Shown here piece by piece: positions 13,358-39,843 of a DNA stretch of 64,000 nt. Made by a program: the position numbers and the translations under genes. Source of the stretch: Macrostomum lignano (taxonomy: Eukaryota). The notes below the pieces were generated by a model, which made no database searches, was not told the origin of the DNA, and worked only from the letters and a program-made list of their open reading frames with translations. The stretch lies in contig NIVC01002196.1 in the NCBI GenBank assembly GCA_002269645.1, positions 1 to 64,000 of the forward strand, written 5' to 3'. Position 1 is the first letter of the stretch, and each line of letters begins with the position of its first letter.

Positions 13358-17059
<3,702 letters not shown>

Positions 17060-20720: not shown

Positions 20721-20729
20721 CGTTTCTAA

Positions 20730-21680
20730 GTCAGTCACTCTGTCAGTCTGTCAGTCTGTCACTCTGTCAGTCTGTCACTCTGTCAGTCTGTCACTCTGTC
20801 AGTCTGTCACTCTGTCAGTCTGTCACTCTGTCAGTCTGTCACTCTGTCAGTCTGTCAGTCTGTCACTCTGTCAGTCTGTCACTCTGTCAGTCTGTCACTC
20901 TGTCAGTCTGTCACTCTGTCAGTCTGTCACTCTGTCAGTCTGTCAGTCAATCTGTCACTCTGTAAGTCTGTCACTCTGTAAGTCTGTCACTTTGTCAACC
21001 TGTCACTTTGTCAACCTGTCACTTTGTCAACCTGTCACTTTGTCAACCTGTCACTTTGTCAACCTGTCACTTTGTCAACCTGTCACTTTGTCAACCTGTC
21101 ACTTTGTCAACCTGTCACTTTGTCAACCTGTCACTTTGTCAACCTGTCACTTTGTCAACCTGTCACTTTGTCAACCTGTCACTTTGTCAACCTGTCACTT
21201 TGTCAACCTGTCACTTTGTCAACCTGTCACTTTGTCAACCTGTCACTTTGTCAACCTGTCACTTTGTCAAACCGTCATTCTGTTTCTCTGTCACCTTGTC
21301 AGTATGTCAGTTCATCTGTTACTTTGTAAGTCTGTCACTCTGCAAGTCTGTCACTCTGCAAGTCTGTCACTCTGTAAGTCTGTCACTGTGTAAGTCTGTT
21401 ATTCTGTCAATCAAGTCAATCTGTCAACCTGTCACTCTGTCAGTCTGTTGGCTTGTCATTCTGTAATCTGTTATAATATCAGTCTGTCAGTCTTTGGCCT
21501 GTCACCTCTGTCAGTCTGTTGGCCTGTCACTCTGTCAGTCTGTTGGCCTGTCATTCTGTAATCTGTTATAATATCCCTCTGTCAATCTTTGGCCTGTCAC
21601 TCTGTCAGTCTTTGGCCTGTCACTCTGTCAGTATTTGGCCTGTCACTCTGTCAGTCTGTCATTCTGTAATTTGTCAGTCA
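20730..21680. repeat. 16-bp minisatellite (TCACTCTGTCAGTCTG / TCACTTTGTCAACCTG)n
   Basis: Two homogeneous blocks switching near 20990, decaying towards the 3' end. Confidence 0.93.
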
Positions 21681-21849: not shown

Positions 21850-23968
21850 ATGAATGAAACCAGCCAGTCAAACACCTGGTGGCAGTGGCCGCGCCTTACA
21901 CCTGGCAAAATTGTCCAGCTGGTCATTCTAACTCTGGGCGTCATCGGTCACGTGACCTACGTGACTTTCCACTGCCGCTCGAGCTCGGCAGCCAGTCGAG
22001 TTCGAGTTACTCAGTCTGGCTTGTCCTGCCTTGACCTGCTGGTCTGCCTGATGGCAGCCTCGGCGCTGCTGGGCCTGACCTCGGCTCCGGCCTGGGTGCC
22101 GGCTGATGGCGAGGGGCTGGCGACAGCCTCGCACTGGCTTCTGTGCCGGCTGTGGCGCAGCAAAGTCGCCTACTGGTCGGCAGTGGCCGGCAGCGCCTTC
22201 GTGCTGACGTTTGTCAGCGCCGACCGTCTGGCCGCAGTTCGGTGGCCCTTCGCCTACAGGCGGCTGGGCGGCGCCAAGTAAATCTGGGCGTCTCCGCGCC
22301 CGGGCCTGGACTTGACGCCCCTCAGCCCTGGACTTGACGCCCCTCAGCCCTGGAGTTGGCGCCCCTCAGCCCTGGACTTGACGCCCCTCAGCCCTGGACT
22401 TGACGCCCCTCAGCCCTGGACTTGACGCCCCTCAGCCCTGGACTTGACGCCCCTCAGCCCTGGAGTTGGCGCCCCTCAGCCCTGGACTTGACGCCCCTCA
22501 GCCCTGGACTTGACGCCCCTCAGCCCTGGACTTGACGCCCCTCAGCCCTGGACTTGACGCCCCTCAGCCCTGGACTTGACGCCCCTCAGCCCTGGACTTG
22601 ACGCCCCTCAGCCCTGGACTTGACGCCCCTCAGCCCTGGAGTTGGCGCCCCTCAGCCCTGGACTTGACGCCCCTCAGCCCTGGACTTGACGCCCCTCAGC
22701 CCTGGACTTGACGCCCCTCAGCCCTGGACTTGACGCCCCTCAGCCCTGGACTTGACGCCCCTCAGCCCTGGACTTGACGCCCCTCAGCCCTGGAGTTGTT
22801 GCCCCTCAGTTCTGGAGTTGGCGCACCTCGGAATCCTAGAATCCCACCCTGGTCCTAGAGTTGGCGCCCCCCGGGTCCTAGAGTTGGCCCCCCCTCCCCG
22901 GGTCCTAGAGTTGGCGCCCCCCCGGTCCTAGAGTTGGCGCCCCCCCGGTCCTAGAGTTGGCCCCCTCCCCCCGGTCCTAGAGTTGGCCCCCTCCCCCGGT
23001 CCTAGAGTTGGCGCCCCCCGGTCCTAGAGTTGGCGCCCCCCGGTCCTAGAGTTGGCCCCCCTCCCCCCGGTCCTAGAGTTGGCGCCCCCCCCCCGGTCCT
23101 AGAGTTGGCGCCCCCCGGTCCTAGAGTTGGCCCCCTCCCCCGGTCCTAGAGTTGGCCCCCCCCGGTCCTAGAGTTGGCGCCCCCCGGTCCTAGAGTTGGC
23201 CCCCTCCCCCCGGTCCTAGAGTTGGCCCCCCCGGTCCTAGAGTTGGCCCCCTTCCCCCGGTTCTAGAGTTGCCCCCCCATTGGTACAGGAGTTGGCGCCC
23301 CCCCCCCCCCAGTCCTAGAGTTGGCGCCTAGATTTGTTATTTATAACGCTCCCTTACTTTTATTCCGTCGCCCCTGTATCAATTCATCAACCTGTCAGCG
23401 TATCAATCTCTGCGCCAATCTCAACCATCTCAGATCGGCTGGCGCGGGCATCGCGGCGCTAATCTTACTCGGCGCGGGAGCCGCGGCGCCCGTCTGCTTT
23501 TCCAGATTCCCGCTGGAGGGGCCAGAAGGCCTGATTGGCTGCGTGCGCATTTCGCCAAGCTGGTACGTGTACTACTCCTACGCCTGGGTCAGCGGCGTGT
23601 ACCTGCTGCCTGCGGCACTGCTGGTGGGCATCAACACCTGCCTGCTGGTGTCGCTGCGCCGGCAAGCCACAGACAGGTCCCAGCTGGTCAACAGGCTGAG
23701 CCTCGGCACCGTTGCTGTGTCAGCCGTGTTCGTGCTGTCCAACGGGCCTGACAACTGCCTGTTCGTGCTGTCCGAGCTGGGCATAGTGGAATACGCCGAG
23801 GGCAGCTGGGTCAAACTCCTGGGCGTCACCCTGGTGGCTGTGAATAGCGCCGCTAACCCTATTGTGTACTTTCTTATCTATCCGCCGTATCGGCAGTTTT
23901 TGTTCTCCTGCGGCTACCGCAGACAGCCGGGCAATGGGAGCCAGGGAGCCTCTGGTTCCCAGCGCTAA
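21850..23968 (+). CDS. Orphan rhodopsin-class (class A) GPCR, 2 exons (21850-22277 [or from 21817], 23434-23968; about 320 aa)
   Basis: Seven hydrophobic segments, N-terminal NET sequon, TM2 Asp (LSCLDLL), TM3 Cys and ADRL, TM5 Pro, TM7 NSAANPIVY. Phase-2 intron AA|gtaaat...ctcag|A keeps the frame. Confidence 0.85.
22305..23330. repeat. Compound minisatellite in the GPCR intron: 22-bp (GCCCTGGACTTGACGCCCCTCA)n then (GGTCCTAGAGTTGGCGCCCCCC)n
   Basis: Two related tandem arrays joined near 22820. Confidence 0.95.
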
Positions 23969-23982
23969 ATCCTGAACTGAAG

Positions 23983-24727
23983 ATCCCGTATTCTGTGACT
24001 GGAGATCCCGTATTCTGTAACTGGAGATCCCGTATTCTGTGACTGGAGATCCCGTATTCTGTAACTGGAGATCCCGTATTCTGTGACTGGAGATCCCGTA
24101 TTCTATAACTGGAGATCCCGTATTCTGTGACTGGAGATCCCGTATTCTGTGACTGGAGATCCCGTATTCTGTGACTGGAGATCCCGTATTCTGTGACTGG
24201 AGATCCCGTATTCTGTGACTGGAGATCCCGTATTCTGTGACTAGATGTCCCACATTATCTGTGACTAGATGTCTCACATTATCTGTGACTAGATGTCCCA
24301 CATTATCTGTGACTAGATGTCCCATATTATCTGTGACTAGATGTCCCACATTATCTGTGACTAGATGTCCCACATTATCTGTGACTAGATGTCCCACATT
24401 ATCTGTGACTAGATATCCCATATTATCCGTGACTAGATATCCCATATTATCCGTGACTAGATATCCCATATTATCTGTGACTAGATATCCCATATTATCT
24501 GTGACTAGATATCCCATATTATCTGTGACTTGATATCCTTTATTATTTGTGACTAGATGTCCCACATTATCTGTGACTAGATATCCCATATTATCCGTGA
24601 CTAGATATCCCATATTATCTGTGACTTGATATCCTTTATTATTTGTGACTTGATATCCTTTATTATTTGTGACTAGATATCCCATTTTTTCTGTGACTAG
24701 ATATCCCACGTTATCTGTGACTAGATA
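23983..24727. repeat. Compound minisatellite 3' of the GPCR stop: 22-bp (GGAGATCCCGTATTCTGTGACT)n then 24-bp (AGATGTCCCACATTATCTGTGACT)n
   Basis: Switch at about 24240. Confidence 0.95.
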
Positions 24728-25839
24728 TTCCCACCCAAATTATTAGATATTAGACAATATTTGACTAAATCTCTTACACTTTCTGTGAGAGATCCGAATT
24801 TCAATGCTGAGACCAGATATTCTCCATCCGCTAAACTAAGGATCTCAGATGCGAAATAATTTTGTAACTTAGCTGCAGGTGATTTTTTGGCAAGTTTTTT
24901 GTTATTTTCAGCTCTTTCAACCGTTGCTGGAAATAGTTCAGTTGGTAAAAATATTTGAGCACAGCAAATACGGTAGAGCATAGTGTTTGAGCATACTTTG
25001 AGAAGAAAGCTGTATTGGCACAGAATATTTCTTAACGCAAATATTAACAGAGATCTTACAATCTGGAGGGGTATCTGTCAGTCTAATCCGTAGCCTTGCA
25101 CACTGTACTACTAGATTCAGTAGCACATGTTGGAAGATGCGAGACATTTGTTTAAATTTTCAAGTTTGAAGTAAAGTAAAATTACTAATCGATAGCTTTG
25201 CGTTGAGTCACCCCGGGGCGTCACTCTGCGTTGCGTTGCGCAATCAATCGCTGTGGAAAATAGACCGAAGAACGCTGTTCTGAATCGCATATGCAATGCA
25301 AAACTTTGACTTGAGTCTTTGTTCCCAGTAGCTTAAGAAATGATGCCCGATTCGGTAACAAGTGGAAGTAACAGTTTGTATTGATTGATATGACTCAAAA
25401 AAGATTTTGCTAACGAACTTTAAAGAAAGAACGACGAAAAATAAATAAGATTCATTCTCGCAAACTTGGATTTGGATTTGGATTGATGCAGAAAACTACC
25501 TTGAATAAGGTATATGCGTATTTTAATCATTTTTTTTATTTTCCGAGTGCGCCAGATGCATGTACAAGCTGAGACATCCTGTTGACCAAATATTGTGTAC
25601 ATTAGAATCTCTGAGTTAGCGACTTCATTTACAGAATCTACTTTTTCTTCATTTATAATTACTTACTTCAAAATTTCTATTTTCAACTTATGTAATGTTC
25701 TTTGCCGCCATTAAATATTTTTACAAAGTTATTGCACAGATTTAAACAAATTATAATTAAACTTATAGTTGCTAAAGTTATTTACCATAAAGATATAGCG
25801 TCGGTAGTCGTAAATCTGCTTTGTTACCGAAGTGGATTG

Positions 25840-26233
25840 GTTATTGTTAGGGTTATTGTTAAGGTTATTGTTAGGGTTATTGTTAAGGTTATTGTTAGGG
25901 TTATTGTTAGGGTTATTGTTAAGGTTATTGTTAGGGCTATTGTTAAGGTTATTGTTAGGGTTATTGTTAGGGTTATTGTTAGGGTTATTGTTAAGGTTAT
26001 TGTTAGGGTTATTGTTAGGGTTATTGTTAAGGTTATTGTTAGGGTTATTGATAAGGTTATTGTTAAGGTTATTGTTAGGGTTATTGATAAGGTTATTGTT
26101 AAGGTTATTGTTAGGGTTATTGTTAAGGTTATTGTTAGGGTTAGGGTTAAAGTTATTGTTAGGGTTAGGGTTATTGTTAGGGTTAAGGCTAGGGTTGGGG
26201 TTAGGTTAGGGTTAGGGTTAAAGTTAGGGTTAG
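25840..26233 (+). repeat. Interstitial telomere-like array: (GGGTTATTGTTA)n grading into TTAGGG
   Basis: The 12-bp unit is TTAGGG+TTATTG. Exact TTAGGG doublets occur at the 3' end (e.g. 26135-26146). Confidence 0.85.
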
Positions 26234-27041
26234 CCCTCGCCGATATCCAATGTAAATGGCAACCGCATTGGTTTGAGATCAAATCCATCAACCAGTTTTA
26301 CACTGGGCCTATTATCCGCTGCCTGGGGTGGTGGAGTTCCCCTCCAGAATTGTATCAGGCCCGAGGCCTTGCTGCAAGGCTTGACCCTAGCCGTGCGCGC
26401 ATGCGAGGAGATGTGTCGCACCTGGTTGCACGCACAAATTGCTGCATGCATGCTTGGCTAAGCCCATGAGCCATCAATCACCGCGCCCAAAGTCCTATAA
26501 TCCCCAGGTCATACCCTATCCATACCTCCCAGCTCCCCGGGCGGGGCGCCCTCCCACAGGAATGGAAGCCCCTCTGTAGAGCCGATAGAAGACCTGCCAA
26601 GGAAGTGACGATCGATTCTAGAAGTTTCTTTGGTCCAGTAGAAATATATGCAGGCTTAGGGGGTTATAATCAGGATACCTTATCGACAGGTAAGGAATAT
26701 CCTACCGTACTGCCTTTAGCTAGGAATTCCGCAAGCCATGTACTGCCGCAATTCCGGACAGGTTGCAGTTAGCTGCAACTGGCTCAAAACTAGTTCGATT
26801 GAAACAGATCAAAGGCTCTCTTTCATTTTTTGCAAGGGATGACTAATTTTGCAAAAATTTGTGTTAGTCTTCAAAACCGTAGAAGTTTAAATAGTTGAGT
26901 ACATTAATAGGGACCCTGGAAATTGGTTGAATTAAATACTGAATGCAGATTAGCGTTGTATAATTTCAGATGACTGAAGATTTATCACATAGACTTCTCA
27001 TAGACAGGTGACAATTTGACCATTTTAGGCACATGATTTCT

Positions 27042-28165
27042 TGACGATAGACACATGATTGCTTGACGATAGACATGATTGCTTGATGATAGACACATGA
27101 TTGCTTGATGATAGACACATGATTGCTTGACCATAGACACATGATTGCTTGACGATAGACACATGATTGCTTGATGATAGACACATGATTGCTTGATGAT
27201 AGACACATGATTGCTTGACCATAGACACATGATTGCTTGACGATAGACACATGATTGCTTGACGATAGACACATGATTGCTTGACGATAGACACATGATT
27301 GCTTGATGATAGACACATGATTGCTTGATGATAGACACATGATTGCTTGACCATAGACACATGATTGCTTGATGATAGACACATGATTAATTGATGATAG
27401 ACACATGATTGCTTGACGATAGACACATGATTGCTTGATGATAGACACATGATTGCTTGATGATAGACACATGATTGCTTGACGATAGACACATGATTGC
27501 TTGACGATAGACACATGATTGCTTGACCATAGACACATGATTGCTTGATGATAGACACATGATTGCTTGATGATAGACACATGATTGCTTGACGATAGAC
27601 ACATGATTGCTTGATGATAGACACATGATTGCTTGACCATAGACACATGATTGCTTGATGATAGACACATGATTAATTGATGATAGACACATGATTGCTT
27701 GACGATAGACACATGATTGCTTGATGATAGACACATGATTGCTTGATGATAGACACATGATTGCTTGACGATAGACACATGATTGCTTGACGATAGACAC
27801 ATGATTGCTTGACCATAGACACATGATTGCTTGATGATAGACACATGATTGCTTGATGATAGACACATGATTGCTTGATGATAGACACATGATTGCTTGA
27901 TGATAGACACATGACTGCTTGACCATAGACACATGATTGGTTGACCATAGACACATGATTGCTTGATGATAGACACATGATTGCTTGACCATAGACACAT
28001 GATTGGTTGACCATAGACACATGATTGCTTGACCATAGACACATGATTGGTTGACCATAGACACATGATTGCTTGACCATAGACACATGATTGCTTGACC
28101 ATAGACACATGATTGCTTGATGCTTGATGATAGACACATGACTGCTTGATGCTTGATGATAGACA
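27042..28165. repeat. 22-bp minisatellite (GATAGACACATGATTGCTTGAT)n
   Basis: About 50 units. Confidence 0.96.
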
Positions 28166-28389
28166 CTGCACATTCTTGCCATTAGGCATTGCAAGAGGCA
28201 GACACAAGATGCTGATTGTTGCCAGGACACGATAAATACGAGCCATGCCACTCACTGTGCCCGCCAATCGTCATCAGCCCATACACGCCCTCAAGCCCCC
28301 ATTCCGTAAAAGTGCCGGCTCTGCCTTCCTCCCTCCCTCTCTCTCGTCGCCTCGGCATTGACGTGCGTGTGAGTGGGTGGGTGAGCTGG

Positions 28390-28441: not shown

Positions 28442-28649
28442 GCAGACCGGCACGTGCAGCCATTGACTGCAGGCGGAAGACGTGGACCAAACAAACTGGG
28501 CGATTTTCTCTCCCTGATCCCCCCAACCCCAGGCGCCCCTCTCTCCTGTAGCCGGAGCCAGTTATTTAACAAACCTTAGCACTTCTGCTCCCCCCTAACA
28601 CGCATCCATCTCCCACGCAGACACAGAGAGAGGCGATCGTGAGCTCATC

Positions 28650-30649
28650 ATGGCCACACAGCCTGGCATCGTTCTGTTGGTGATTTCGCTGTCTGCGGCT
28701 GGCATCTGGCAGCCGGCCAGCTCCGAGCGAGCCAACCGCTGTGCCTACCCTCAGGTGCAGCAGATGTTCGATCTGGCCAAGTACGGACTGAGCGGCTGCT
28801 ACAAGCTCAAGAGTCTGACTGTCATATTTGGCGATTCCAAGAGCACCAGAGACACGCTGGTAGCCGCTCGCTACCTGACTGCCAATCTGGTCTTTATCGG
28901 CACTGTTAGTCACGTGATCAAAGACGCTTCCTCCGGCGGCGGACAGTTTAAAATTAAAGTACAAGTGGACTGCTACCTGAGGGGCCGACTGAACAGGGAG
29001 GAGGTTGAGGTGACTGGTCTGAACAGCGGCTTCGGCACTGGTCTCTGCCTGGACATCAAGTGCGAGGACGGCGACTCCGGCCTGTTCTTTGTGACCTACA
29101 CCGACGGTGAGAGCTGTGTCAGGTGGTTTCAGCTGATGTGTCAGGTGGTTTCAGCTGATGTGTCAGGTGGTTTTAGCTGATGTGTCAGGTGGTTTCAGCT
29201 GATGTGTCAGGGGGTTTTAGCTGATGTGTCAGGTGGTTTCAGCTGATGTGTCAGGTAGTTTTAGCTACTGTGTCAGATGGTTTAGCTACTGTGTCAGATG
29301 GTTTAGCTACTGTGTCAGATGGTTTAGCTACTGTGTCAGATGGTTTAGCTACTGTGTCAGATGGTTTAGCTACTGTGTCAGATGGTTTAGCTACTGTGTC
29401 AGATGGTTAAGCTACTGTGTCAGATGGTTTAGCTACTGTGTCAGATGGTTTAGCTACTGTGTCAGATGGTTTAGCTACTGTGTCAGATGGTTTAGCTACT
29501 GTGTCAGATGCCTCGAGCCCAGCCACTCAAATCGCCACTGCTTCAGGCGAGCTGCGTATCAACGAAAACGGCTTCGTCCGCAAAGGTCCCGAGCTCGATT
29601 TCGTGATGAAGACGCTCCGCTGCCGGGAGAATCGCGACTCGGTCAGCGTCTGGCCCACCGCCTCACGGCCGGGCCAAGCGAAGAATCCGCAGTGCGAGGC
29701 GCGACCGGCCGATCCGCTGGCCGAGCCGACCTGCCAGATGAGTCTGGCCACCGCCCGGCAGTACCTGGACCTCTCCTTCATCCATTTCGAGTCCGACCTG
29801 AAGCCCGAGTGCCAGGAGGGAAAGGACTTCGTCATGCGGCAGCTGATTAAGACGCCGGTCGAACCGAAAGGTGAAGCGAACTGATGCCCTAAATCTCACC
29901 CTGCGACAGGAGAAATGGATGCCCTAAATCTCACCCTTCGACAGGAGAAATGGATGCCCTAAATCTCACCCTGCGACAGGTGAATTGGATGCCCTAAATC
30001 TCACCCTGCGACAGGAGAAATAGATGCCCTAAATCTCACCCTGTTACAGGAGAATTGGATGCCCTAAATCTCACCCTGCGACAGGTGAATTGGATGCCCT
30101 AAATCTCACCCTGCGACAGGTGAATTGGATGCCCTAAATCTCACCCTGCGACAGGAGAAATAGATGCCCTAAATTTCACCCTGTATCAAGGGATGGATGC
30201 CCTAAATCTCACCGTGTATCAAGGGATGGATGCCCTAAATCTCACCGTGTATCAAGGGATTATGGATGCCCCCAAATCTCACCGTGTATCAAGGGATGGA
30301 TGCCCTAAATCTCACCCTGCAGCAAGAGAATAAACACAAATTTTATGCAATCTCATAGATGCAGGCTACATATGTCCTCAAGATCCCAAAAGGTCAGGTG
30401 ACAGCGTAGCTTTTCACTGGTTTTCAATGAACTTCGGGAACTTTATGTCCGTCAGGGCTGATCAAATGCCACACCGGCCTCTCTGCGAGCCAGTAATTAC
30501 ATCAGCGGAGAGCCTCCTCTGTCTAATTCCGTGCCTTTGCTCATGCCCTGCTGTTTACAGAGACAAACCCTTGCCGGTGCTCACTCAAAGGCTCCGCTGT
30601 TTCTCTTTTTTTCCTCTTCTCCTGTTTGCAGCTGCACTTTGCCCAGTAA
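28650..30649 (+). CDS. Secreted, probably GPI-anchored protein with agrin N-terminal (NtA)-like domain (exons 28650-29106, 29547-29870, then 30561-30649 or an alternative 3' exon at 32682-32790)
   Basis: Signal peptide MATQPGIVLLVISLSAAGIWQPASS. ANLVFIGTV...FKIKVQVDCYLRG...SGFGTGLC...GDSGLFFV parallels agrin NtA (ANVVLTGTV...YSCKVRVWRYLKG...SGFGDPLIC...GDTRIFFV). Phase-1 introns are in frame. The 3' end is uncertain. Confidence 0.7.
29118..29510. repeat. 21-22-bp minisatellite (GTGTCAGATGGTTTAGCTACT)n, NtA-gene intron 1
   Basis: Tandem repeat filling the intron. Confidence 0.95.
29884..30320. repeat. 35-bp minisatellite (GATGCCCTAAATCTCACCCTGCGACAGGAGAAATG)n
   Basis: Tandem repeat just after the exon 2 donor. 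Confidence 0.93.
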
Positions 30650-30794
30650 TAGCTGCGTTAGCAATCTTCCCGCATGCTTCTATCGGCATCTTTAGTACCC
30701 AGCTGCTGCATCCGATAGAGTAATGGGGGAAGCGCTTCACTGCGCGTGAGCGTCTTTCACTACCTCACGGAGTGTGCATTGTAGAAATCCAGCA

Positions 30795-31405
30795 TCTCTC
30801 TCTACCTCTCCACTCTCTCTACCTCTCCCCTATCACTACCTCTCCCCCCTCTCTCTCTACCTTTCCCCCCTATCTCTACCTCTCCCCTCCCTCTACCTCT
30901 CCCCTATCTCTACCTCTCCCTCCTCTCTCTCTCTACCTCTCCCCTCTCTCTCTACCCCCCCTCTCTCTCTACCTCTCCACTCTCTCTACCTCTCCCCTCT
31001 CTCTACCTCTCCCCCCTCTCTCTCTACCTCTCCCCTCTCTCTCTACCTCCCCCCTCTCTCTCTACCTCTCCACTCTCTCTACCTCTCCCCTCTCTCTACC
31101 TCTCCCCCCTCTATCTCTACCTCTCCCCTCTCTCTCTCTACCTCCCCCCTCTCTCTCTACCTCTCCACTCTCTCTACCTCTCCCCTCTCTCTACCTCTCC
31201 CCTCTCTCTACCTCTCCCCTCTCTCTACCTCGCCACTCTCTCTACCTCTCCCCTCTCTACCTCTCCACTCTCCTTACCTCTCCCCTCTGTCTACCTCTCC
31301 ACTCTCTACCTCTTCCTTTTCTCTCTCTACATCTCCCTCTATATCACTCCCCCTCTCTCTCTCTACATCTCCCTCTATATCACTCCCCCTCTCTCTACCT
31401 CTCCC
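30795..31405. repeat. CT-rich low-complexity array (CTCTCTACCTCTCCC-like)
   Basis: Polypyrimidine tandem variants. Confidence 0.93.
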
Positions 31406-32391
31406 TATTTCTCTCTCTTCTTTTCATTTTCTTTTTTTCTCACTTTCCCTGCTTTCGTTTGCGTTCGGTATCTTTTGCCTGCTCGCGTGACCTGCTCAGG
31501 CGGCGGCTGCTCAAGCGGAGGGAGAATTGGGGCAGAGACGGGGTCAATTTTCGATACTCCGCTTTTCGATCCCCGGGGCATCTCAACCTCTCAACCTGCC
31601 GCCGTCTGGGAATAAAATCCCATTTCCTGATCGGACCGGCTCCCTACTCGTAAGTCAGGGACTTGTAAGCCTAACAATCTGGAGTGGAAAACCACTACAC
31701 ATTGCTACGAGAGTACATCGAAATTACTAAGGTGTGAGTATTCGTGGCTGGGAGCTTTAGTAAGCGCTGCGTTGACTGTAAAGTTTTTATAGCCTGTATC
31801 GATTATAGTAAATATATTGACTTGAGCAGCTGGATAGTAGCCTACCAAATCCTCCACAGGGGAAGAAAGTGATTGGCTCTTCAATCGCCGCACTTTTCTC
31901 TCGGGATTTAACAGTAGAAGAGTAAATTTTATGTTGCCAACTGAAACTCTCTCTCTTTATCTCTGTCTACTCTCTCGCCCAGTGCACTATAGCATTAAAA
32001 TTGATCCACACGGTTATAGGAAGCCGCTCGCCCTGAACAGGCAGCCAGCCCAGACCACGGGGATCTGTTCCTCTCCTCCCACTCGGGACGTACACTTCGG
32101 GCAGTCATAAAACAGCTATTGCCCCAATCCCCGCCCAACCCCCATAGTTGGGACGGGCTCCAACCTACTTTTGCTCTAAATTTTGTACAAAACAATTTTC
32201 TCTCATTTTTCTGTTTATCTGGAGGGTTCGAGTAAGATTAGGGAATGCGTGGCGAGGGCTGAGACTGGCAGATATAGAATAATTTCTCACTGTCCTGTCT
32301 GACTTGCTTTTGAGGTAAACTTATTGCCTTCTAAAACTAAAGTACACGCTACTTCCCGTGAGTAGCCGTTTACGTTACTTGGGACAGCCAC

Positions 32392-32555
32392 TCACCTCAC
32401 TTGAGTACCCGCTTACCTCACTTGAGTACCCGCTTACCTCACTTGAGTACTCATATACCTCACTTGAGTACTCATGTACCTCACTTGAGTACTCATGTAC
32501 CTCACTTGAGTACTCATGTACCTCACTTGAGTACTCATGTACCTCACTTGAGCAT
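32392..32555. repeat. 21-bp minisatellite (CCTCACTTGAGTACTCATGTA)n
   Basis: About 8 units. Confidence 0.93.
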
Positions 32556-32681
32556 CCCCTACCTCCCTTAAGTAACCCACTTAGCACACTTATCTTATTT
32601 GAGTACCCGCACAATCATCTCAACCCGAAGACTCAGTCAAGCCACTGAAACTCCAATTCTGCATATTTCAGTTTCTTACAG

Positions 32682-32790
32682 CTTCATGTACGGCAAAGGA
32701 GGCTCCAGAGTGCGCCCGATGACTCTGCCAGCGGCTGCCGCAGCTGTCGTCAGCATCTTTAGTCTGATGTGGCTGGCGCGCTGCCATTGA
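32682..32790 (+). CDS. Candidate terminal exon encoding a GPI-signal-like hydrophobic tail (FMYGKGGSRVRPMTLPAAAAAVVSIFSLMWLARCH*)
   Basis: Acceptor tttcttacAG at 32680-32681 followed by small residues, a spacer, a hydrophobic stretch and a stop. Probably belongs to the NtA-domain gene; it joins in frame via a possible 16-nt micro-exon at 30561-30576. Confidence 0.45.
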
Positions 32791-33759
32791 AACGATTCAT
32801 GGAATACTCGTAAATCGAACAAAACTGATTTTACTTAAACAAAAAGTACACTTTTTCCCTGTCTATTTCAACAGTCATTCCATGCTCAGAATAAAAAAGT
32901 TTCTATTTAGACAACAAAAATTTATCACCATAATGGATATCACTTTCTGTGTTTCTTTGGATTGCAAGCAGTCAGAAATATACGCCATCTACTACAGACA
33001 TTTCTAAAAAATATTATGACTATCTAGCATGGAAATTGCATATTGGTTCTGTTGAAATAGACTGGGAAATGGTCCTATAGTGTCAGTCAGTCAGTAAGTC
33101 AGTCAGTCAGCCATGGTCCACTGAAAAAAGCATGAAATTTGCAATGATGCGAAATGTCTCGACGAGACAGGCAGTTTTCAGTGTTTCAAACATTAAATTG
33201 CCATTTTAATTAGAAGCCGATTCACAGTTTGTCACATTTAAGTTCTTAACGATTCTTTAAAATTTCAGCAAGAGCGTCCTTCTAACTGTTGTCGCAGTCC
33301 TCGCCTCCTTTGTGTCACTTTCTATAGTCTCTGTTCGATGCCTTCTGTCTGGTGCGCGAGTTTCATTTCTCGTTCTATGGAAAATTCACAACCAATATAA
33401 CTTGTAGTTTTCTTTTGAGCACTTCATAACTTGTTTTACTCCTGTATATTCATTTGAAATATTGATCAAGTTCATCTCATTGTCGGAAAACAAACTTAAT
33501 GTTTTTCACAGTCTGAGTCTGTTTCAAATTCAGTTGAGTAATCGCTTTTGCGCCATCAAAATATTCCAACTTTTTTCTCTCATTGAATATTAGAACTATT
33601 AAATAAAATTTAGCCAAGCACAACTGTTATCGCTTTCGTTTACAAGTAAAAACTCCATGAATGTACTTACTGCGTTATTCCTGTGTAAGCGCTTAGTGTA
33701 CAATTGCAATATGAGTGTCCTTGATTAAGAAATTGAGACTGTGTGACGTTGCCTGAGGA

Positions 33760-34410
33760 ACTGGGAGAGCAGTGGCCCAGCAACTGAGGATCTGGGAGGC
33801 TGACCCAGCAACTGAGGATCTGGGAGGCTGACCCAGCAACTGAGGATCTGGGAGGGCAGTGGCCCAGCAACTGAGGATCTGGGAGGCTGACCCAGCAACT
33901 GAGGATCTGGGAGGGCAGTGGCCCAGCAACTGAGGATCTGGGAGGGCAGTGGCCCAGCAACTGAGGATCTGGGAGGCTGACCCAGCAACTGAGGATCTGG
34001 GAGGGCAGTGGCCCAGCAACTGAGGATCTGGGAGGGCAGTGGCCCAGCAACTGAGGATCTGGGAGGCTGACCCAGCAACTGAGGATCTGGGAGGGCAGTG
34101 GCCCAGCAACTGAGGATCTGGGAGGCTGACCCAGCAACTGAGGATCTGGGAGGGCAGTGGCCCAGCAACTGAGGATCTGGGAGGCTGACCCAGCAACTGA
34201 GGATCTGGGAGGCTGACCCAGCAACTGAGGATCTGGGAGGCTGGCCCAGCAACTGAGGATCTGGGAGGGCAGTGGCCCAGCAACTGAGGATCTGGGAGGC
34301 TGACCCAGCAACTGAGGATCTGGGAGGGCAGTGACCCAGCAACTGAGGATCTGGGAGGCTGACCCAGCAACTGAGGATCTGGGAGGGCAGTGGCCCAGCA
34401 ACTGAGGAAC
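33760..34410. repeat. 28/31-bp minisatellite (CCCAGCAACTGAGGATCTGGGAGG-CTGA/-GCAGTGG)n
   Basis: Two interleaved unit variants. Confidence 0.95.
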
Positions 34411-34787
34411 TGGGAGTGCGGTGTGCCCAGTCCCAATAGACTTCCGGCTCTCCAAAGCCTGCAAGCCGCTGGATGCTGGATTGTAGTGCAGCGGCAAAAC
34501 GCTCAGGCAATTCTTGTTGGCATTCAGCTGCACTGCATGTGGCACACAACTGCATAAATGGTTTGCATGAAACATAAAAATCCCATTATCCAGTCTCCCT
34601 AACCTCATATAGATGATGGACACTTGCGACTGTATGACTGCCGCGGAGCAGCACGTATAAATATTTAATGTTTGTCCACTCAGCTGGGGAAGGACATTTT
34701 TGTGGAAATCGCGTGGATTTCGGTGCGTTATGAGCTACAGCACGAGGAGCTTTAAACTGTAAAGGAGGAAAACTTTGCTATTCCATT

Positions 34788-35476
<689 letters not shown>

Positions 35477-36429
35477 CTTGAAAATAGAACGGTAGCCGTC
35501 TACGCATAGTCGTCGACAAAACGTTCGAAAAACGTTCTTTTTTTACGGCTTGTGTTTAAGTTCTGTCAAACTAGTAACCGTTCGCGTTGGCCCTTTACGA
35601 GTACTTAGGTTGTTTGCGCCCACCACGACGCTTGCGTTGTGCGCGCGCCTATATAAGAACATCAGTCACAAGAGTTACAACTCTTAGAGTCTTAGCGCAG
35701 CTGCTGATGTCTACTGGACAATCATCGGTGTCCTCATGTATTGTATCATTTCATATAAAGTCTCAACAATTTATAGAAAAGATCATTAGCAAACTATCGG
35801 CGGTGGCAGCCTATTACTTACAGTAATCAGGAGAGGAACACTTTAGAAATGTCCCTACAACGCCCCCCTCCCACAGCCCTGCAGCAAAGTGGAACGGTTG
35901 GCATGGAAACCGAACAGCTGCAGAAGCCCTTTCACAGACTGCTCAGCAACAACTCAAACTACTGTCCTCCCAGGCTAATTAAAATGCTCATTTAAAATAT
36001 TATGTGTTTCCAAATTTCATATTGATATTTGAGTGCAGGTACTTCTGTTTCAACCGACTGCAGGTGAATGGTTAGTGGTATATATACATTATACAACAAA
36101 AAAGACGCAACCTAGAAAACTATGAGTCAAAGTCTGATGCTAGGGTGCAGATGGCGCACGGCAGTGCGAGCGGACGAAGTATTTATTATAGAATCGCAGT
36201 CGGTGACTCGTATTTTTGATAGATATATTTTGTGGACATATAAGCATTCAAAATTTCACAAAATATGTATTTTAAACCTCTACATGGTGTCGCGTGTCAG
36301 TCAATCTCGACTCATGGCACATTCAACAGTGGACAGCCGACTTAGCAAGAGAATTGTTTGGCTTAAAAATAAACAGGATATGCAGAATATTATGCGATCA
36401 CGTGAGTCAGGTGATGCCTCTTTGGTGTT

Positions 36430-37120
36430 GTAGACCTTACTGAGGTCAGGTACAATACTCTGCTCGCTGATTAGGTGTCCCAGGTACAGCACCTGGCGAT
36501 AGCCGAACACGCTCTTTGCATTGTGCAGTTTGAGACCCGCATCTCGCAGCCGTTAAAAAAACGCGCTCCAGTCTCACCGGATTCTCGTCGAAGGTCCTGC
36601 TGAAGACAATGAAGTCGTCGATGTAAGTCAGCATGGAGTCCCAGGACAGAAGGCAGTTTTAAAAGGATCCTCTTCCGCCACCTCCACCTGGTGGTAGCTC
36701 TACCGACAGTCGATGGTGGAGAATCAGGAGCACCCGACCAGAGCATTCATGCTTGCTGCATGTGCGGCAGCGGGTACGCGTCCTTGACCGTGCAGGCATT
36801 CAGCTGCCGCCAGTCCGTGCATTTTGCCGTTCTTCTTACGGACCACCACCAGGTTGCTCGCCCATGGCGACGACGACGGCTCGATGATGCCGCTGTCCAG
36901 CATCTGTACGATCTTTTTATTCACCTGGTCTCGCACAGACAGAGACAGGCGGCGCTGCATGGACTTGCCAGTGCGGCCGCGTTCCCGGTTCCAGTACCAC
37001 CTGGTGGTGCAGCAGCTCCGTCGTGCCCAAGTCGTACTCGTGCTTGGCGAACAAGTTCTCGTTGCACTCTAGCAGCTGCCGCAGCCTCGCTGCATCCGGT
37101 CCGGGTAGCTCTGCGTTGAT
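36430..37120 (-). mobile_element. Degenerate Ty3/Gypsy LTR-retrotransposon pol (RT) fragment
   Basis: Across frameshifts: LFAKHEYDLGTTELLHH, QMLDSGIIEPSSSPWASNLVVVRKKNG, YIDDFIVFSRTF and YLGHLIS. The internal RT motifs are deleted and no LTRs were found. Confidence 0.85.
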
Positions 37121-37649
37121 GTTCTACCCGACGGGGGCCTCGTGAGCTTGGCTCGAAAAAAGTTGGCTTTGCTAGAGTTTCTTTCGCCTTTAGCAAAGAA
37201 GCTCTTCATTCATATACATATATCAGGCTCTATCAGTCATCAGACAGACTAAAGCCAAGTCTTTGTTGCATGCTCAATTGATACACAAGTGCTACAGTGG
37301 TGCGTTTCATGCCATAGACAACAAGCCGTCTGACTGCAAATTTTTATAAGGCATTCTCTATATAAAACACTGAAAAAGTGGTCCTGTACAAAAAAGCTCA
37401 CTGCTCTTCTCGAAATGAAGATTGACAAAAATCGAGTTTTGTATCTTGTAGAGGGATAAATTCTGTACAGGTTGGCGAAAAACCAGCTTTCTACGTTCAA
37501 TAATAAATCCTAGGGAGCACTAGAAAAAACCAGCCTCCAACTATTTTCTGTATGATTTGGCCAGTTTCCGGTCCCTAGTTTAAGTAGTCCGTCCCTGAGG
37601 ACGGCCTGGATAGATCGGTAGAAGGCCCATGCGAGTCCTCTGCTGGGCG

Positions 37650-38200
37650 CTAGATATCCGCCTTTACGTGTGGCACCAGATCGCGAACCGCTCTATAAGG
37701 TGAGACCGTAGGTGAACCGCTGGCAGCGTGAGAATGTAAGCTTCTGTTCGTCTGTGCTGCGGTAAGCCATGTCCTTTATAATTTCAGCCGGCACGGTGAG
37801 CACCTCGGTGAGCATATTGTGGCGTCGATACGAGCGTAAGCTGTTGCGGAACCCGATAGACTCGCACGACGAATGGGGAGTGCAGCCTTCAGCACCAAAC
37901 CGAAAACTTTCAGAGGTCAATAAAGACAATAACAAGCGGTCAACTAATATAATATACAGTTCCAACAGCTAGTGTCCTTGTGGTCAACGTGTGGTCGTGT
38001 GGATGCTCGCTAGCTTCTTCGATGACAGAGCGGAGCGCGAGGATCTGGGTCACTGTACCGCGTTGAGGCCGAAACCTATATTGCTTGGAATGGAGGTCCA
38101 GCACCGACTGCAGAGGATCGAACAGCAGCACATCAGCGAGATGTCCTGCGCCACCCAATGGTTTTTAACGCGTTGGCCTGGCCTTCTTTGGGATCGGCAT
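37650..38200 (-). mobile_element. Degenerate non-LTR retrotransposon (RTE-like) RT fragment
   Basis: QYRFRPQRGTVTQILALRSVIEE (cf. QxGFRxxRSTxxQIxxLRxIxE) and VRVYRVPQQL, interrupted by stops and frameshifts. Confidence 0.55.
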
Positions 38201-38337
38201 ATAGCACAAAGTACGCTGTGTCAAGGCCAGTGAGGCATATCGAACTGAAATGTGACCAACATTCGTTTCTAAGTTGCAGTTTACTATGCGTAAAATTTCA
38301 TCACAACCAGTGAAGCATAACTAGTATACTCAGCAGA

Positions 38338-38698
38338 GGGGGCCGTAGCCCAGCGGTAGCGCAGCTGCTCTGGTGTGCCAGCGACCCAGGCTCGATTCCA
38401 AGTGCAGTCACATTAATTTGGGGCTGAATTGGAATCTCGGCTTGGCTCTGCTCGTGCAATTAACGGCCTTGAGAGCCAACCCCCCAAGGCGCAGTGAAGT
38501 GTACATGCCTAACGATAAAATAAAGTTAGGGCCGCTGTACACTCCTGTGTGAGTGTATGCCTGCGTACGTATCCGCGCGCTTGTATGCCTGCTCAGGGGA
38601 GTCGGCGGAATGGGCAGTAATGCCTCTTGCCGGTTGTGTGCCTATGTCGCTTAAAGTGCGCCAGGGTGCACACAACCCCCCTGCCTCTAATAAAAAAA
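38338..38698 (+). mobile_element. tRNA-headed SINE, copy 1 (about 360 bp, A-tail, 13-bp TSD)
   Basis: A box TAGCCCAGCGG and B box GGCTCGATTCC at the 5' end, AATAAAAAAAA tail, and TSD AGTATACTCAGCA at 38323-38335 and 38699-38711. Confidence 0.85.
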
Positions 38699-38702
38699 AG
38701 TA

Positions 38703-39345
38703 TACTCAGCAACAGCTAAACCCACTCACGCTGTCACACGGCCCAAAAGTTTTGTATGCCATCGGTGACTCAGAAATGTGTGAAGGCTGCCGCCGCCAGA
38801 CGCGAGCGCAAAGTGCGGCATGGGGGATTTGGGGAGGGGGTGGCGCAACTCAACCCACTGGTGGCTGCATTGCGCAATGGTAAACCATCAGAGCTACAGC
38901 TACAGCAGCAGTTTCTGCCATTTGCTACGACAACCTTTGGCGGCCCGCAGAACTGCATTCTTCAAGACGACAACGCTGCGCCACATCGAGCAGCACACGT
39001 GCAGCTGCTGAAGGAGCAGCTCGGCATTCGCACATTGAACTGGCCGTCAAAGTCTCCAGACATGAACCCCATCGAGCATGTCTGGGTCTTTGTAAAGCGA
39101 AGAGTTCAGCAGGATGCCCCACAGAATGCTGAACAGTTGCGACTGGCGGTGCTGAATGCCTGGCAGCTGCTGCCCCAAGAGTTCATCAACCGGCTGGTGA
39201 TCAGGATGCCACGACGAGTCACGGCCCTTTTGCATGCTCGTGGTTCCTACACACGATACTGAGACTAGAATTAAAGACATTGCTTAACTTTTGTGCCCGT
39301 GTGACAGCGTGAGTTGGGGGGGGGGGGTTTAGCTGTTGCTGAGTA
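38703..39345 (+). mobile_element. Non-autonomous Tc1 (DD34E) element carrying the transposase 3' half
   Basis: TIRs TACTCAGCAACAGCTAAACCC...CTCACGCTGTCACACGG at 38703-38751 and 39286-39345, flanked by TA. ORF contains LQDDNAAPH...WPSKSPDMNPIEHVW with exactly 34 residues between D and E; stop at 39262. The first D and the HTH are missing. Confidence 0.9.
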
Positions 39346-39490
39346 TATATAGTGTCTGTAAATTTTGGGATAATGTATTGTAAATGAAACACATGGTGTG
39401 ACTTTTCAAGTTGCAACTTGACCAATATTTGTTTCTCAGTTGCAGTTTACTGTGGGTAAAGTCTTAAAGCTCCACAGTTTCATTTTACTT

Positions 39491-39843
39491 TTTTATTAGA
39501 GGCAGGGGGGTTGTGTGCACCCTGGCGCACTTTAAGCGACATAGGCACACAACCGGCAAGAGGCATTACTGCCCATTCCGCCGACTCCCCTGAGCAGGCA
39601 TACAAGCGCGCGGATACGTACGCAGGCATACACTCACACAGGAGTGTACAGCGGCCCTAACTTTATTTTATCGTTAGGCATGTACACTTCACTGCGCCTT
39701 GGGGGGTTGGCTCTCAAGGCCGTTAATTGCACGAGCAGAGCCGAGATTCCAATTCAGCCCCAAATTAATGTGACTGCACTTGGAATCGAGCCTGTGTCGC
39801 TGGCACACCAGAGCCTGCGCTAGACCGCTGAGCTACGGCCCCC
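39491..39843 (-). mobile_element. tRNA-headed SINE, copy 2 (inverted relative to copy 1, 12-bp TSD)
   Basis: Near-identical reverse complement of 38338-38698. A box TAGCTCAGCGG and B box GGCTCGATTCC. TSD TTCATTTTACTT at 39479-39490 and 39844-39855. Confidence 0.85.

What the first reader, a model, noticed from the sequence alone, without database searches (positions are those of the whole stretch)
28650..32790. Stand-alone agrin NtA-like domain on a small, probably GPI-anchored surface protein
Seen: signal peptide, a roughly 120-aa segment with motif-by-motif similarity to the agrin N-terminal domain, a short Cys-containing module (about 10 Cys in the mature chain), and a hydrophobic C-terminal tail, in about 290-300 aa. 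Known: NtA is the OB/TIMP-fold domain by which agrin binds the laminin coiled coil, normally followed by follistatin, EGF and LamG domains, none of which are present here. Inference: a membrane-tethered mini laminin anchor or decoy that could link cells to basement membrane independently of agrin, plausibly an undescribed lineage-specific family.
Basis: partly seen in the sequence, partly recalled or inferred. Interest (0 to 1): 0.75.

Follow-up and report, generated by a model that had tools for sequence, protein, structure and literature searches.

The report
Stand-alone agrin-NtA-like flatworm surface protein
A small three-exon gene of the flatworm Macrostomum lignano, filed publicly as a "hypothetical protein", encodes a secreted and probably lipid-anchored protein whose core is a very divergent copy of the laminin-binding NtA domain, a domain described so far only at the tip of the large matrix protein agrin; what it binds is untested.

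Summary
The window is Macrostomum lignano contig NIVC01002196.1. Positions 28650-32790 are exactly the CDS of BOX15_Mlig004681g1 (PAA60064.1, 299 aa, "hypothetical protein").

The protein has these parts:
- a signal peptide;
- a 47-aa extension with two Cys;
- a ~113-aa NtA-like OB/NTR-fold domain;
- an ~82-aa module with three Cys and no known family;
- a last exon encoding a GPI-type signal (GGS, short spacer, 18 hydrophobic residues, RCH).

The NtA assignment rests on weak but concordant tests:
- Pfam NtA is the only hit, E 0.004, below the curated cut-off.
- A PDB profile search finds only agrin NtA, E 9e-4.
- hhalign gives 88.8% probability, score 47.6 against at most 18.7 in shuffles.
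- Foldseek on two low-confidence AlphaFold models puts the four agrin NtA structures on top.

It is not the 5' end of agrin. It ends in a stop, and no Kazal, EGF or LamG exons lie in the 10 kb before the next gene (Vangl/Strabismus). A 35%-identical paralogue at another locus has the same architecture.

The family appears only in M. lignano among about 15 billion proteins. Laminin binding is inference only. Four residues of agrin's secondary laminin site are replaced. The GPI anchor is rule-based and unconfirmed. I rate it a new architecture for a known domain, of moderate interest.

The parts
28650..29106 (+). Exon 1 (aa 1-152 plus the first base of codon 153); phase-1 GT donor at 29107
   Evidence: tblastn of P0001 gives 99.4% identity over aa 1-154. 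The spliced product matches PAA60064.1 exactly.
28650..28703 (+). Signal peptide, aa 1-18 (MATQPGIVLLVISLSAAG); likely cleavage after A16-A17-G18 by the -3/-1 rule
   Evidence: Kyte-Doolittle profile and inspection. No trained predictor was run.
28704..28844 (+). N-terminal extension, aa 19-65, with Cys31 and Cys50. The motif C-x-YP-x2-QQ-x-F...GL-x-GC...IFG is shared with paralogue P0003. Agrin NtA has no counterpart.
   Evidence: Alignment A1; no Pfam or PDB hit; pLDDT below 50.
28845..29106 (+). NtA-like domain, first part (aa 66-152): N-terminal helix and beta strands 1-4
   Evidence: Pfam NtA covers aa 71-158. hhalign covers profile columns 76-177. The AF2 model has helix 66-77 and strands 80-91, 99-111, 118-125, 143-151. 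Foldseek's top hits are 1jb3, 3i70, 1pxu and 1jc7.
29107..29546 (+). Intron 1 (440 bp, phase 1), made almost entirely of a 21-bp minisatellite (29114-29510, 18.6 copies). An alternative in-frame acceptor lies at 29507/29508.
   Evidence: It is 718 bp in copy g2. Paralogue Mlig026377 has no intron at this position.
29547..29623 (+). NtA-like domain, second part (aa 153-178): strand 5 (ELRINENG, compare agrin ELMLNSS) and the C-terminal helix (PELDFVMKTLRC), ending at Cys178, which is invariant in the family
29624..29870 (+). C-terminal module (aa 179-260) of unknown family, with Cys202, Cys215 and Cys241 and two predicted helices; phase-1 donor at 29871
   Evidence: No Pfam hit and only noise in PDB. 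Conserved in P0003 and in the fragment P0004.
29871..32671 (+). Intron 2 (2.8 kb, phase 1, splits a Val codon), containing three minisatellite arrays
   Evidence: A phase-1 intron in a Val codon occupies the same position in paralogue Mlig026377.
32672..32790 (+). Exon 3 (aa 261-299 plus TGA): the membrane-anchor exon
32698..32787 (+). GPI-attachment-type signal. Candidate omega site G270-G271-S272 (32698-32706), spacer RVRPMT, hydrophobic tail LPAAAAAVVSIFSLMWLA (32725-32778), then RCH.
   Evidence: assessed by rules only. P0003 ends in an equivalent signal (SIGS...RN plus 19 hydrophobic residues).
32890..32895 (+). AATAAA poly(A) signal, 100 nt after the stop codon

Best explanation
Positions 28650-32790 hold a complete, transcribed three-exon gene of Macrostomum lignano, Mlig004681.g1. 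It encodes a 299-aa protein of the secretory pathway.

The core (aa ~66-178) is a strongly diverged agrin-type NtA domain: an OB/NTR beta-barrel flanked by an N-terminal and a C-terminal helix. A family-specific 2-Cys extension precedes it. An ~82-aa 3-Cys helical module of no known family follows it. A separate last exon supplies a GPI-attachment-type signal.

The gene is not part of agrin. It belongs to a small family of at least three paralogue groups, each present in near-identical copies in this recently duplicated genome. So far the family is seen only in M. lignano.

Most likely mechanism (inferred, not shown): after signal-peptide cleavage and GPI addition, the protein sits on the outer leaflet of the plasma membrane and presents the NtA-like barrel and its C-terminal helix to an extracellular ligand. 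By analogy with agrin, the leading single candidate is the laminin coiled coil. In that case the protein would tether the cell surface directly to basement membrane.

My estimates:
- stand-alone NtA-type domain protein: about 0.85;
- C-terminal membrane attachment of some kind: about 0.85;
- GPI specifically: about 0.6;
- laminin as the ligand: about 0.3.
For: Shown: gene model and identity.

Shown: the public annotation of this assembly is built from RNA-seq (StringTie/TACO/TBONE; PMC5730564).

NtA homology:
- Pfam NtA is the only family, E 0.0039. This is similar to the E 0.0066 reported for the accepted Trichoplax agrin NtA; the C. elegans N-terminal region is not detected at all (PMC2874008 Table S1).
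- PDB profile search: the four agrin NtA entries at E 9e-4, the next hit at E 0.3.
- hhalign probability 88.8%, E 2.5e-6, 28% identity over 102 columns. The null maximum is 18.7 against 47.6.
- The AF2 model has the helix, five strands, helix topology with pLDDT 50-73 in the core.
- Foldseek ranks 1jb3, 3i70, 1pxu and 1jc7 first (E ~7e-7, TM 0.58-0.61 normalised to the target). PCOLCE, meteorin, TIMP and C3 NTR modules follow.
- An independent model of paralogue P0003 again ranks the four NtA entries first, E 2-4e-3.

Not agrin:
- Stop codon and AATAAA.
- Open frames of 45 aa or more on the + strand between 32791 and 42800 give no Kazal, EGF or LamG hit, only a DDE_3 transposase remnant.
- The next gene is Strabismus.
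- P0003 has the same architecture at a locus with different neighbours.

Anchor:
- There are only two hydrophobic segments, the N-terminus and aa 279-296.
- GGS, a 6-residue spacer and an 18-residue tail fit the classical GPI signal.
- A phase-1 intron in a Val codon isolates this tail exon in both paralogues.

Helix 3: by ungapped extension, agrin L117, V120 and V124 fall on L169, V172 and L176. L176 and C178 are invariant in the family. The role of L117/V124 is taken from PMC3439447.
Against: - The Pfam score is below the gathering cut-off (17.4 against 25.1 bits), and P0003 alone gives no Pfam NtA hit.
- Both AF2 models are poor overall (mean pLDDT 43 and 42, alignment of only three sequences), so the fold matches must be read cautiously.
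- A full HMMER scan of 1.84 billion representative proteins with the whole protein did not retrieve any agrin.
- Agrin's secondary laminin-binding residues E23, E24, R40 and R43 (PMC7160337) align to S87, H88, Q105 and C108. R43 is invariant in vertebrates.
- Helix 3 lies outside every profile alignment.
- The Cys at agrin position 2 is missing at the aligned position.
- No GPI or signal-peptide predictor was available, and there is no expression, localisation or binding information.
Confidence: 0.7

Rival explanations
1. The NtA-type fold is real, but the domain has been re-purposed. It binds a lineage-specific ligand other than laminin, such as another matrix or cell-surface protein, or it serves a non-adhesive role such as shielding or signalling. 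Laminin binding has been lost or never existed in this family.
For: All four secondary-site residues are replaced, including R43, whose Ala mutant binds 40-fold worse. The extra N-terminal extension and the unknown C-terminal module are both conserved between paralogues. The family is extremely divergent from all agrins. NTR modules in other proteins bind very different partners (one search lists PCOLCE, meteorin, TIMP and C3).
Against: Hydrophobic residues persist at the positions matching the primary helix-3 epitope, L117/V124. No alternative ligand is suggested by any data.
Confidence: 0.45
2. The C-terminal hydrophobic stretch is a conventional type I transmembrane helix with a 3-residue cytoplasmic tail (RCH), not a GPI signal.
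For: The 18-residue hydrophobic segment is followed by a basic residue. The fragment P0004 has a hydrophobic stretch followed by about 19 more residues, which looks less like a GPI signal. No predictor was run.
Against: The tail is short, Ala/Ser/Pro-rich and only moderately hydrophobic. Eight to ten residues upstream lies a cluster of small residues (GGS). P0003 ends directly in its hydrophobic tail with no cytoplasmic residue.
Confidence: 0.25
3. The resemblance to NtA is spurious. The region is some other small beta-barrel (a generic OB fold), and the weak hits reflect chance together with AlphaFold bias.
For: The Pfam score is sub-threshold. Both models are low-confidence. Ribosomal and RPA OB folds also appear in the Foldseek lists.
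Against: Four methods of different kinds all rank agrin NtA first, in two paralogues only 35% identical. The shuffle and reversal controls are far below the real hhalign score. NtA-specific motifs line up in order: ANxVxxGxV, YLxGR, GFGxxxC, GDxxxFFV, ELxxN.
Confidence: 0.1
4. It is a membrane-tethered TIMP-like metalloproteinase inhibitor built on the shared NTR fold.
For: N-TIMP-1, -2 and -3 are among the Foldseek matches (E 2e-3 to 1e-2). The size and two-module layout loosely recall TIMPs.
Against: - TIMP inhibition needs Cys1 at the mature N-terminus, with the Cys1-Cys70 and Cys3-Cys99 disulfides. Here the first Cys lies 6-13 residues after either plausible cleavage site, and there is no CxC.
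- Agrin NtA itself does not inhibit MMPs, for exactly this reason (PMC3439447).
- There is no Pfam TIMP or NTR hit.
- Sequence identity to TIMPs is 9-16%, against 23-25% to NtA.
Confidence: 0.05
5. It is simply the 5' end of the M. lignano agrin gene, or a pseudogenised fragment of it.
For: In vertebrates the NtA exons are often annotated as separate short 'agrin-like' proteins.
Against: - The last exon carries an in-frame stop after a hydrophobic tail, followed by AATAAA.
- No Kazal, EGF or LamG coding potential lies in the 10 kb downstream, and the next gene is Strabismus.
- The same complete architecture occurs in a paralogue at another locus and in three intact near-identical copies.
- The gene model is RNA-seq based.
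Confidence: 0.03

Closest known systems
Agrin N-terminal (NtA) domain, Pfam PF03146, structures 1JB3/1JC7/1PXU/3I70
   Same: It is the best and only family match by HMM, by profile-profile comparison and by fold. Both have a helix, a five-stranded OB barrel and a C-terminal helix. The motifs ANxVxxGTV, YLxG, GFGxxxC, GDxxxFFV and ELxxN are shared. A Cys sits next to agrin Cys74, and another Cys sits at the end of helix 3. In agrin the helix-3 Cys makes an interdomain disulfide to the next domain (reference 22 of PMC3439447).
   Different: The score is below Pfam's cut-off, with about 25% identity. There is an extra 47-aa 2-Cys N-terminal extension. There is no Cys at agrin position 2. The secondary laminin-site residues are all replaced (R43 becomes Cys108). 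The loop between strands 4 and 5 is short. It is followed by an unknown module and a membrane anchor, not by follistatin, LE, SEA, EGF and LamG domains.
Other NTR modules (TIMP N-domain, PCOLCE, meteorin, complement C3/C4/C5 C345C, netrin C-terminal domain)
   Same: They share the OB-barrel NTR fold. They form the second tier of Foldseek matches (E 2e-4 to 1e-2).
   Different: Sequence identity is lower (9-18%) and there is no Pfam NTR or TIMP hit. The protein lacks the six-Cys NTR pattern and the N-terminal Cys1/CxC that TIMPs need for inhibition.
Engineered 'mini-agrin' laminin-to-cell linkers (NtA fused to the agrin LG domains; PMC2064083)
   Same: If laminin binding holds, the logic is the same: a small protein with NtA at one end and a cell-surface attachment at the other, bridging basement membrane and plasma membrane.
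   Different: Mini-agrin attaches to the cell through LG domains binding dystroglycan. Here attachment would be a direct lipid anchor. This protein is natural rather than engineered, and its ligand is unproven.
Transmembrane (TM) isoform of vertebrate agrin
   Same: It is a membrane-attached form of an agrin-related protein.
   Different: In vertebrates, NtA and the type II membrane anchor are mutually exclusive alternative N-termini (PMC2874008). Here an NtA-like domain and a C-terminal anchor coexist in one 299-aa chain.

Membership tests
Agrin NtA domain (PF03146) | Match to the Pfam NtA HMM at or above the gathering score (25.1 bits) | tested here: not met
   17.4 bits, E 0.0039, aa 71-158 against model positions 6-104 of 115. 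The 312-aa splice variant gives 14.4 bits. P0003 alone gives no hit. Accepted invertebrate agrin NtA domains score similarly badly (Trichoplax E 0.0066, C. elegans undetected).
Agrin NtA domain (PF03146) | Significant profile-level similarity to authentic NtA domains | tested here: met
   The family profile against PDB finds only the four agrin NtA entries, E 9e-4. hhalign against 15 vertebrate NtA domains gives probability 88.8%, E 2.5e-6, score 47.6. Controls score 15.8 and at most 18.7.
Agrin NtA domain (PF03146) | OB/NTR beta-barrel flanked by N- and C-terminal helices | tested here: met
   AF2 topology is H66-77, E80-91, E99-111, E118-125, E143-151, E154-164, H167-178. Foldseek's top four are agrin NtA, E ~7e-7, TM 0.58-0.61 normalised to the target. 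The result is replicated with P0003. Caveat: core pLDDT is only 50-73.
Agrin NtA domain (PF03146) | Cys2-Cys74 disulfide linking the N-terminus to the loop between strands 3 and 4 | tested here: inconclusive
   Cys133 aligns one residue before agrin Cys74 in both paralogues. There is no Cys at the position aligned to Cys2. Possible partners are Cys31 or Cys50 in the extension. The models are too poor to assign disulfides.
Agrin NtA domain (PF03146) | Laminin-binding residues: primary epitope L117/V124 on helix 3, secondary site E23, E24, R40, R43 | tested here: not met
   The secondary site is S87, H88, Q105, C108. The primary epitope maps to L169/L176 only by an ungapped extension beyond the profile alignments, so that half is inconclusive.
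Agrin NtA domain (PF03146) | Binding to the laminin gamma-chain coiled coil | not testable with these tools
   This needs recombinant protein and a binding assay.
Agrin (the full-length proteoglycan) | NtA (or a TM segment) followed by follistatin/Kazal, laminin-EGF, EGF and LamG domains | tested here: not met
   There are no such domains in the protein or in + strand open frames 32791-42800. The chain stops at 32788, and the next gene is Strabismus.
TIMP family | Mature N-terminus starting with Cys1 (CxC), and a Pfam TIMP match | tested here: not met
   The first Cys is residue 31, which is 6-13 residues after the plausible cleavage sites. There is no TIMP or NTR Pfam hit.
GPI-anchored proteins | N-terminal signal peptide plus a C-terminal signal: small omega, omega+1 and omega+2 residues, a 5-10 residue spacer, a 15-20 residue hydrophobic end and no cytoplasmic domain | tested here: met
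   By rule-based inspection only: G270-G271-S272, RVRPMT, an 18-residue tail, RCH. An equivalent signal is present in P0003. No trained predictor was available.
GPI-anchored proteins | Actual lipid anchoring (PI-PLC release, omega-site mapping) | not testable with these tools
   This is an experimental test.

The most novel reading that the evidence does not exclude
A flatworm lineage has detached the agrin-type NtA domain from agrin and fused it to a lipid anchor. The result would be a minimal cell-surface receptor that clamps the plasma membrane directly onto the laminin coiled coil. It would be a natural counterpart of the engineered mini-agrin linkers, the first NtA domain known outside agrin, and a new class of basement-membrane receptor independent of integrin and dystroglycan.
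Probability: 0.2. Interest if true: 0.7.

Novelty: new variant of a known kind. Interest (0 to 1): 0.45.

Why it matters
In the literature I could search, NtA is treated as an agrin-only domain. It is listed among Pfam domains exclusive to ECM proteins (PMC4224354), and it is discussed only as agrin's N-terminus (PMC2874008).

A free-standing, membrane-anchored copy would show that this laminin-clamp module has been shuffled into a different architecture at least once.

If it still binds laminin, it would be a very small, genetically tractable cell-to-basement-membrane tether. M. lignano already has transgenesis and RNAi.

It also gives a testable annotation to six 'hypothetical' proteins and to their misnamed database entries.

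If it does not bind laminin, it is an ordinary lineage-specific surface protein built on an old fold.

Tried and rejected
1. Alternative exon-3 acceptor at 32682. It shifts the frame to ...EPKASCTAKEAPECAR* and removes the hydrophobic tail. I rejected it as the main form because the public RNA-seq-based protein uses 32672. A minor soluble isoform is not excluded.

2. Alternative exon-2 acceptor at 29508 (312 aa). Not used by the public model. Kept only as a possible variant.

3. Searching for relatives:
- Word-indexed search with the protein, and again with the family alignment.
- One full HMMER scan of 1.84 billion representatives.
- All three returned only M. lignano proteins. No agrin and no other species were found.

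4. The last homology search, with chicken NtA, returned only vertebrate agrins. It could not show whether M. lignano has its own agrin or whether NtA-only proteins exist elsewhere. The short vertebrate 'agrin-like' entries look like split annotations of the far-upstream NtA exon.

5. The OCR text of the published invertebrate NtA alignment was too damaged to use.

6. Expression data. No paper or held supplement mentions Mlig004681 or Mlig026377.

7. Selection test between copies g1 and g2. There are only 2 differences in 900 nt, which is uninformative.

8. Identity of the N-terminal extension and the C-terminal module. No Pfam or PDB match, and pLDDT is below 50.

9. The original papers on the laminin site and on the interdomain disulfide (PMC140726, PMC2821262) are not held. 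The facts I use come from papers that cite them.

Full report
WHAT IS THERE

The window is the first 64 kb of contig NIVC01002196.1 of the Macrostomum lignano Mlig_3_7 assembly. The protein I assembled by hand from the window is identical to PAA60064.1 (BOX15_Mlig004681g1). Its gene is recorded at positions 28650-32790 of that contig.

The gene has three exons on the + strand:
- exon 1, 28650-29106;
- exon 2, 29547-29870;
- exon 3, 32672-32790.

Other features of the gene:
- GT-AG introns, both in phase 1;
- an in-frame TAA 54 nt upstream of the ATG;
- TGA at 32788;
- AATAAA at 32890.

Both introns are packed with minisatellites. The assembly's annotation is derived from RNA-seq (StringTie/TACO plus trans-splice and poly(A) mapping; PMC5730564). 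The splice pattern is therefore transcript-supported, not an ab initio guess. An in-frame alternative acceptor at 29508 would add 13 residues.

THE PROTEIN (299 aa)

- aa 1-18: hydrophobic signal peptide.
- aa 19-65: a conserved extension with Cys31 and Cys50.
- aa ~66-178: the NtA-like domain.
- aa 179-260: a module with Cys202, Cys215 and Cys241 and two predicted helices.
- aa 261-299, all of exon 3: VSYSFMYGK-GGS-RVRPMT-LPAAAAAVVSIFSLMWLA-RCH.

There are only two hydrophobic segments, one at each end of the chain. There are no N-glycosylation sequons. Of ten Cys, nine lie outside the tail, and eight of these are conserved in the paralogue.

IS THE NtA RESEMBLANCE REAL?

Each test is weak alone, but all agree.

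1. Pfam. NtA (PF03146) is the only family found: E 0.0039, 17.4 bits, model positions 6-104 of 115. This is below the 25.1-bit cut-off. For comparison, a published survey reports E 0.0066 for the Trichoplax agrin NtA, and no Pfam detection at all for the N-terminal region of C. elegans agrin that it nevertheless assigns as NtA (PMC2874008 Table S1).

2. PDB sequence search. The top four hits are the four agrin NtA entries. E is 0.036 with one sequence and 9e-4 with a three-sequence family profile. The next hit is at E 0.3.

3. Profile-profile comparison with 15 vertebrate NtA domains. Probability 88.8%, E 2.5e-6, 28% identity over 102 columns. The score of 47.6 compares with 15.8 for the reversed target and at most 18.7 in 30 column shuffles.

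4. Structure.
- AlphaFold2 on the shallow alignment is poor overall (pLDDT 43). The core reaches 50-73 and has the NtA topology of helix, five strands, helix.
- Foldseek against the PDB ranks 1jb3, 3i70, 1pxu and 1jc7 first (E ~7e-7, TM ~0.6 normalised to the target, 23-25% identity).
- The NTR modules of PCOLCE, meteorin, TIMP-3 and C3 follow.
- A separate model of the 35%-identical paralogue P0003 again puts the four NtA entries first, E 2-4e-3.

I conclude that this is a genuine but very divergent NtA-type NTR domain. About 0.1 remains for a spurious resemblance.

IT IS NOT AGRIN

- The reading frame ends in exon 3.
- On the + strand between 32791 and 42800, open frames of 45 aa or more give no Kazal, EGF or LamG hit. 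They give only a DDE_3 transposase remnant.
- The next gene is Vangl/Strabismus.
- A paralogue, Mlig026377 (P0003, 307 aa), lies on another contig between a lipase gene and a Band_7 gene. It has the same layout: signal peptide, 2-Cys extension, NtA-like domain, Cys module, hydrophobic C-terminus.
- In both genes a phase-1 intron that splits a Val codon separates the ectodomain from a last exon encoding the omega region and tail.

THE FAMILY

Three searches returned only M. lignano proteins. Two were word-indexed searches of 5.8 billion clusters. One was a full HMMER scan of 1.84 billion representatives. The proteins found are:
- Mlig004681 g1-g3, which are near-identical. g1 and g2 differ at 2 of 900 nt.
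- Mlig026377 g1-g3.
- A 122-aa fragment of a third paralogue (P0004).
- A frameshifted old-assembly version (P0002).

None carries a domain annotation. Their UniRef cluster names (SH2, Peptidase S1, Transmembrane protein) have no support in the Pfam scans here.

HOW IT PROBABLY WORKS

Shown: secretory-pathway entry signals at both ends, and an NtA-type fold.

Inferred: the C-terminus is a GPI signal.
- It has a triplet of small residues (GGS), a 6-residue polar spacer and an 18-residue Ala/Ser/Val-rich tail ending 3 residues before the stop.
- P0003 ends directly in its hydrophobic tail.
- A type I transmembrane helix remains possible, at about 0.25.

On either reading, the NtA-like barrel is displayed on the outside of the cell.

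In agrin, NtA binds the laminin coiled coil mainly through Leu117 and Val124 of the C-terminal helix. A secondary site comprises Glu23, Glu24, Arg40 and Arg43 (PMC3439447 and PMC7160337).

Here the secondary-site positions are Ser87, His88, Gln105 and Cys108. The position matching Arg43 is also a Cys in the paralogue P0003.

Helix 3 lies outside all profile alignments. An ungapped extension places L169, V172 and L176 on agrin L117, V120 and V124. L176 and C178 are invariant in the family.

Laminin is therefore the leading single candidate ligand, but at only about 0.3. A re-purposed ligand specificity is at least as likely.

A TIMP-like inhibitor role is unlikely. There is no N-terminal Cys1 or CxC, and agrin NtA itself does not inhibit MMPs for that reason.

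Cys178 at the end of helix 3, together with an odd number of Cys (three) in the following module, suggests an interdomain disulfide. Agrin has such a bond between NtA and its first follistatin domain (reference 22 of PMC3439447). This is inference.

COMPARISON AND NOVELTY

The domain is known. The architecture is new as far as I could find: NtA-like domain, then an unknown Cys module, then a lipid anchor, with no follistatin or LamG domains.

Text searches for NtA-like or NtA-domain-containing proteins outside agrin found nothing relevant. In vertebrates the NtA and membrane-anchored N-termini of agrin are mutually exclusive (PMC2874008). Planarians have two agrin homologues (PMC6453901). I could not test whether M. 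lignano does.

I classify this as a new variant of a known kind. Interest is moderate at 0.45. The structural inference is sound but low-resolution, the taxonomic range is a single species, and there are no functional data.

LIMITS

- The family alignment is very shallow (three sequences), so the models are poor.
- No signal-peptide or GPI predictor was available.
- No eukaryotic genome collection was available to search.
- No expression information was found.

Noticed in passing
window 29107-29546 (minisatellite 29114-29510); L001 10458-11175; L002 10001-10808: Intron 1 consists almost entirely of a 21-bp minisatellite. Its length differs between gene copies: 440 bp here and 718 bp in g2. Paralogue Mlig026377 encodes the same stretch without any intron. 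The 13 codons before the used acceptor (DASSPATQIATAS) are in frame and resemble the paralogue's Ser/Ala-rich loop. This looks like an intron created by expansion of a tandem repeat inside a once-continuous exon.
   Followed up: partly
window 32670-32682: Two AG acceptors lie 10 nt apart (tttcag|tttcttacag|). The annotated first one gives the hydrophobic tail. The second would shift the frame to ...EPKASCTAKEAPECAR*, giving a tail-less form that would presumably be secreted. No transcript evidence was available to me.
   Followed up: no
window 28590-28620: A strong polypyrimidine tract followed by CAG lies 30 nt upstream of the ATG. It could be an SL trans-splice acceptor (about 39% of M. lignano genes are trans-spliced according to PMC5730564) or a 5'UTR intron acceptor.
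   Followed up: no
P0125, P0002, P0004 (database names): UniRef names attached to family members ('Peptidase S1 domain-containing protein', 'SH2 domain-containing protein', 'Transmembrane protein') find no support in Pfam scans of the sequences. P0002 looks like a frameshifted version from the older ML2 assembly.
   Followed up: partly
window 38720-39259 (+) and 49365-49634 (-): Transposon remnants are present: a Tc1/mariner-type DDE_3 transposase fragment (E 2.6e-9) and a transposase-type helix-turn-helix open frame (HTH_23, HTH_SB).
   Followed up: partly
window 13361-13906 (-), 42989-43963 (+), 60765-62813 (-), 55713-56000 (-), 7037-7678 (+): Neighbouring genes are a cytochrome P450 (E 4e-34), Vangl/Strabismus (E 1e-75), a rhodopsin-type GPCR within a 683-aa open frame that also carries a Pro/His/Ser-rich repeat, a second weak 7tm_1 C-terminal fragment with NPxxY, and a weak TPR-containing open frame.
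   Followed up: partly
whole window, e.g. 7659-8633, 16298-16842, 17750-18186, 20075-21463, 23723-24739, 25732-26297, 26969-28270, 34.0-35.4 kb, 58819-60005: The window has an extraordinary density of long micro- and minisatellite arrays that stay open in several reading frames on both strands. They produce many long spurious ORFs and large swings in GC skew (-0.40 at 30-32 kb).
   Followed up: no
one search hits (vertebrate genomes): In many vertebrate annotations the agrin NtA exon is called as a separate 110-210-aa 'agrin-like' or 'NtA domain-containing' protein. The likely reason is that the alternative first exon lies far upstream of the rest of AGRN. These should not be mistaken for true stand-alone NtA proteins.
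   Followed up: no
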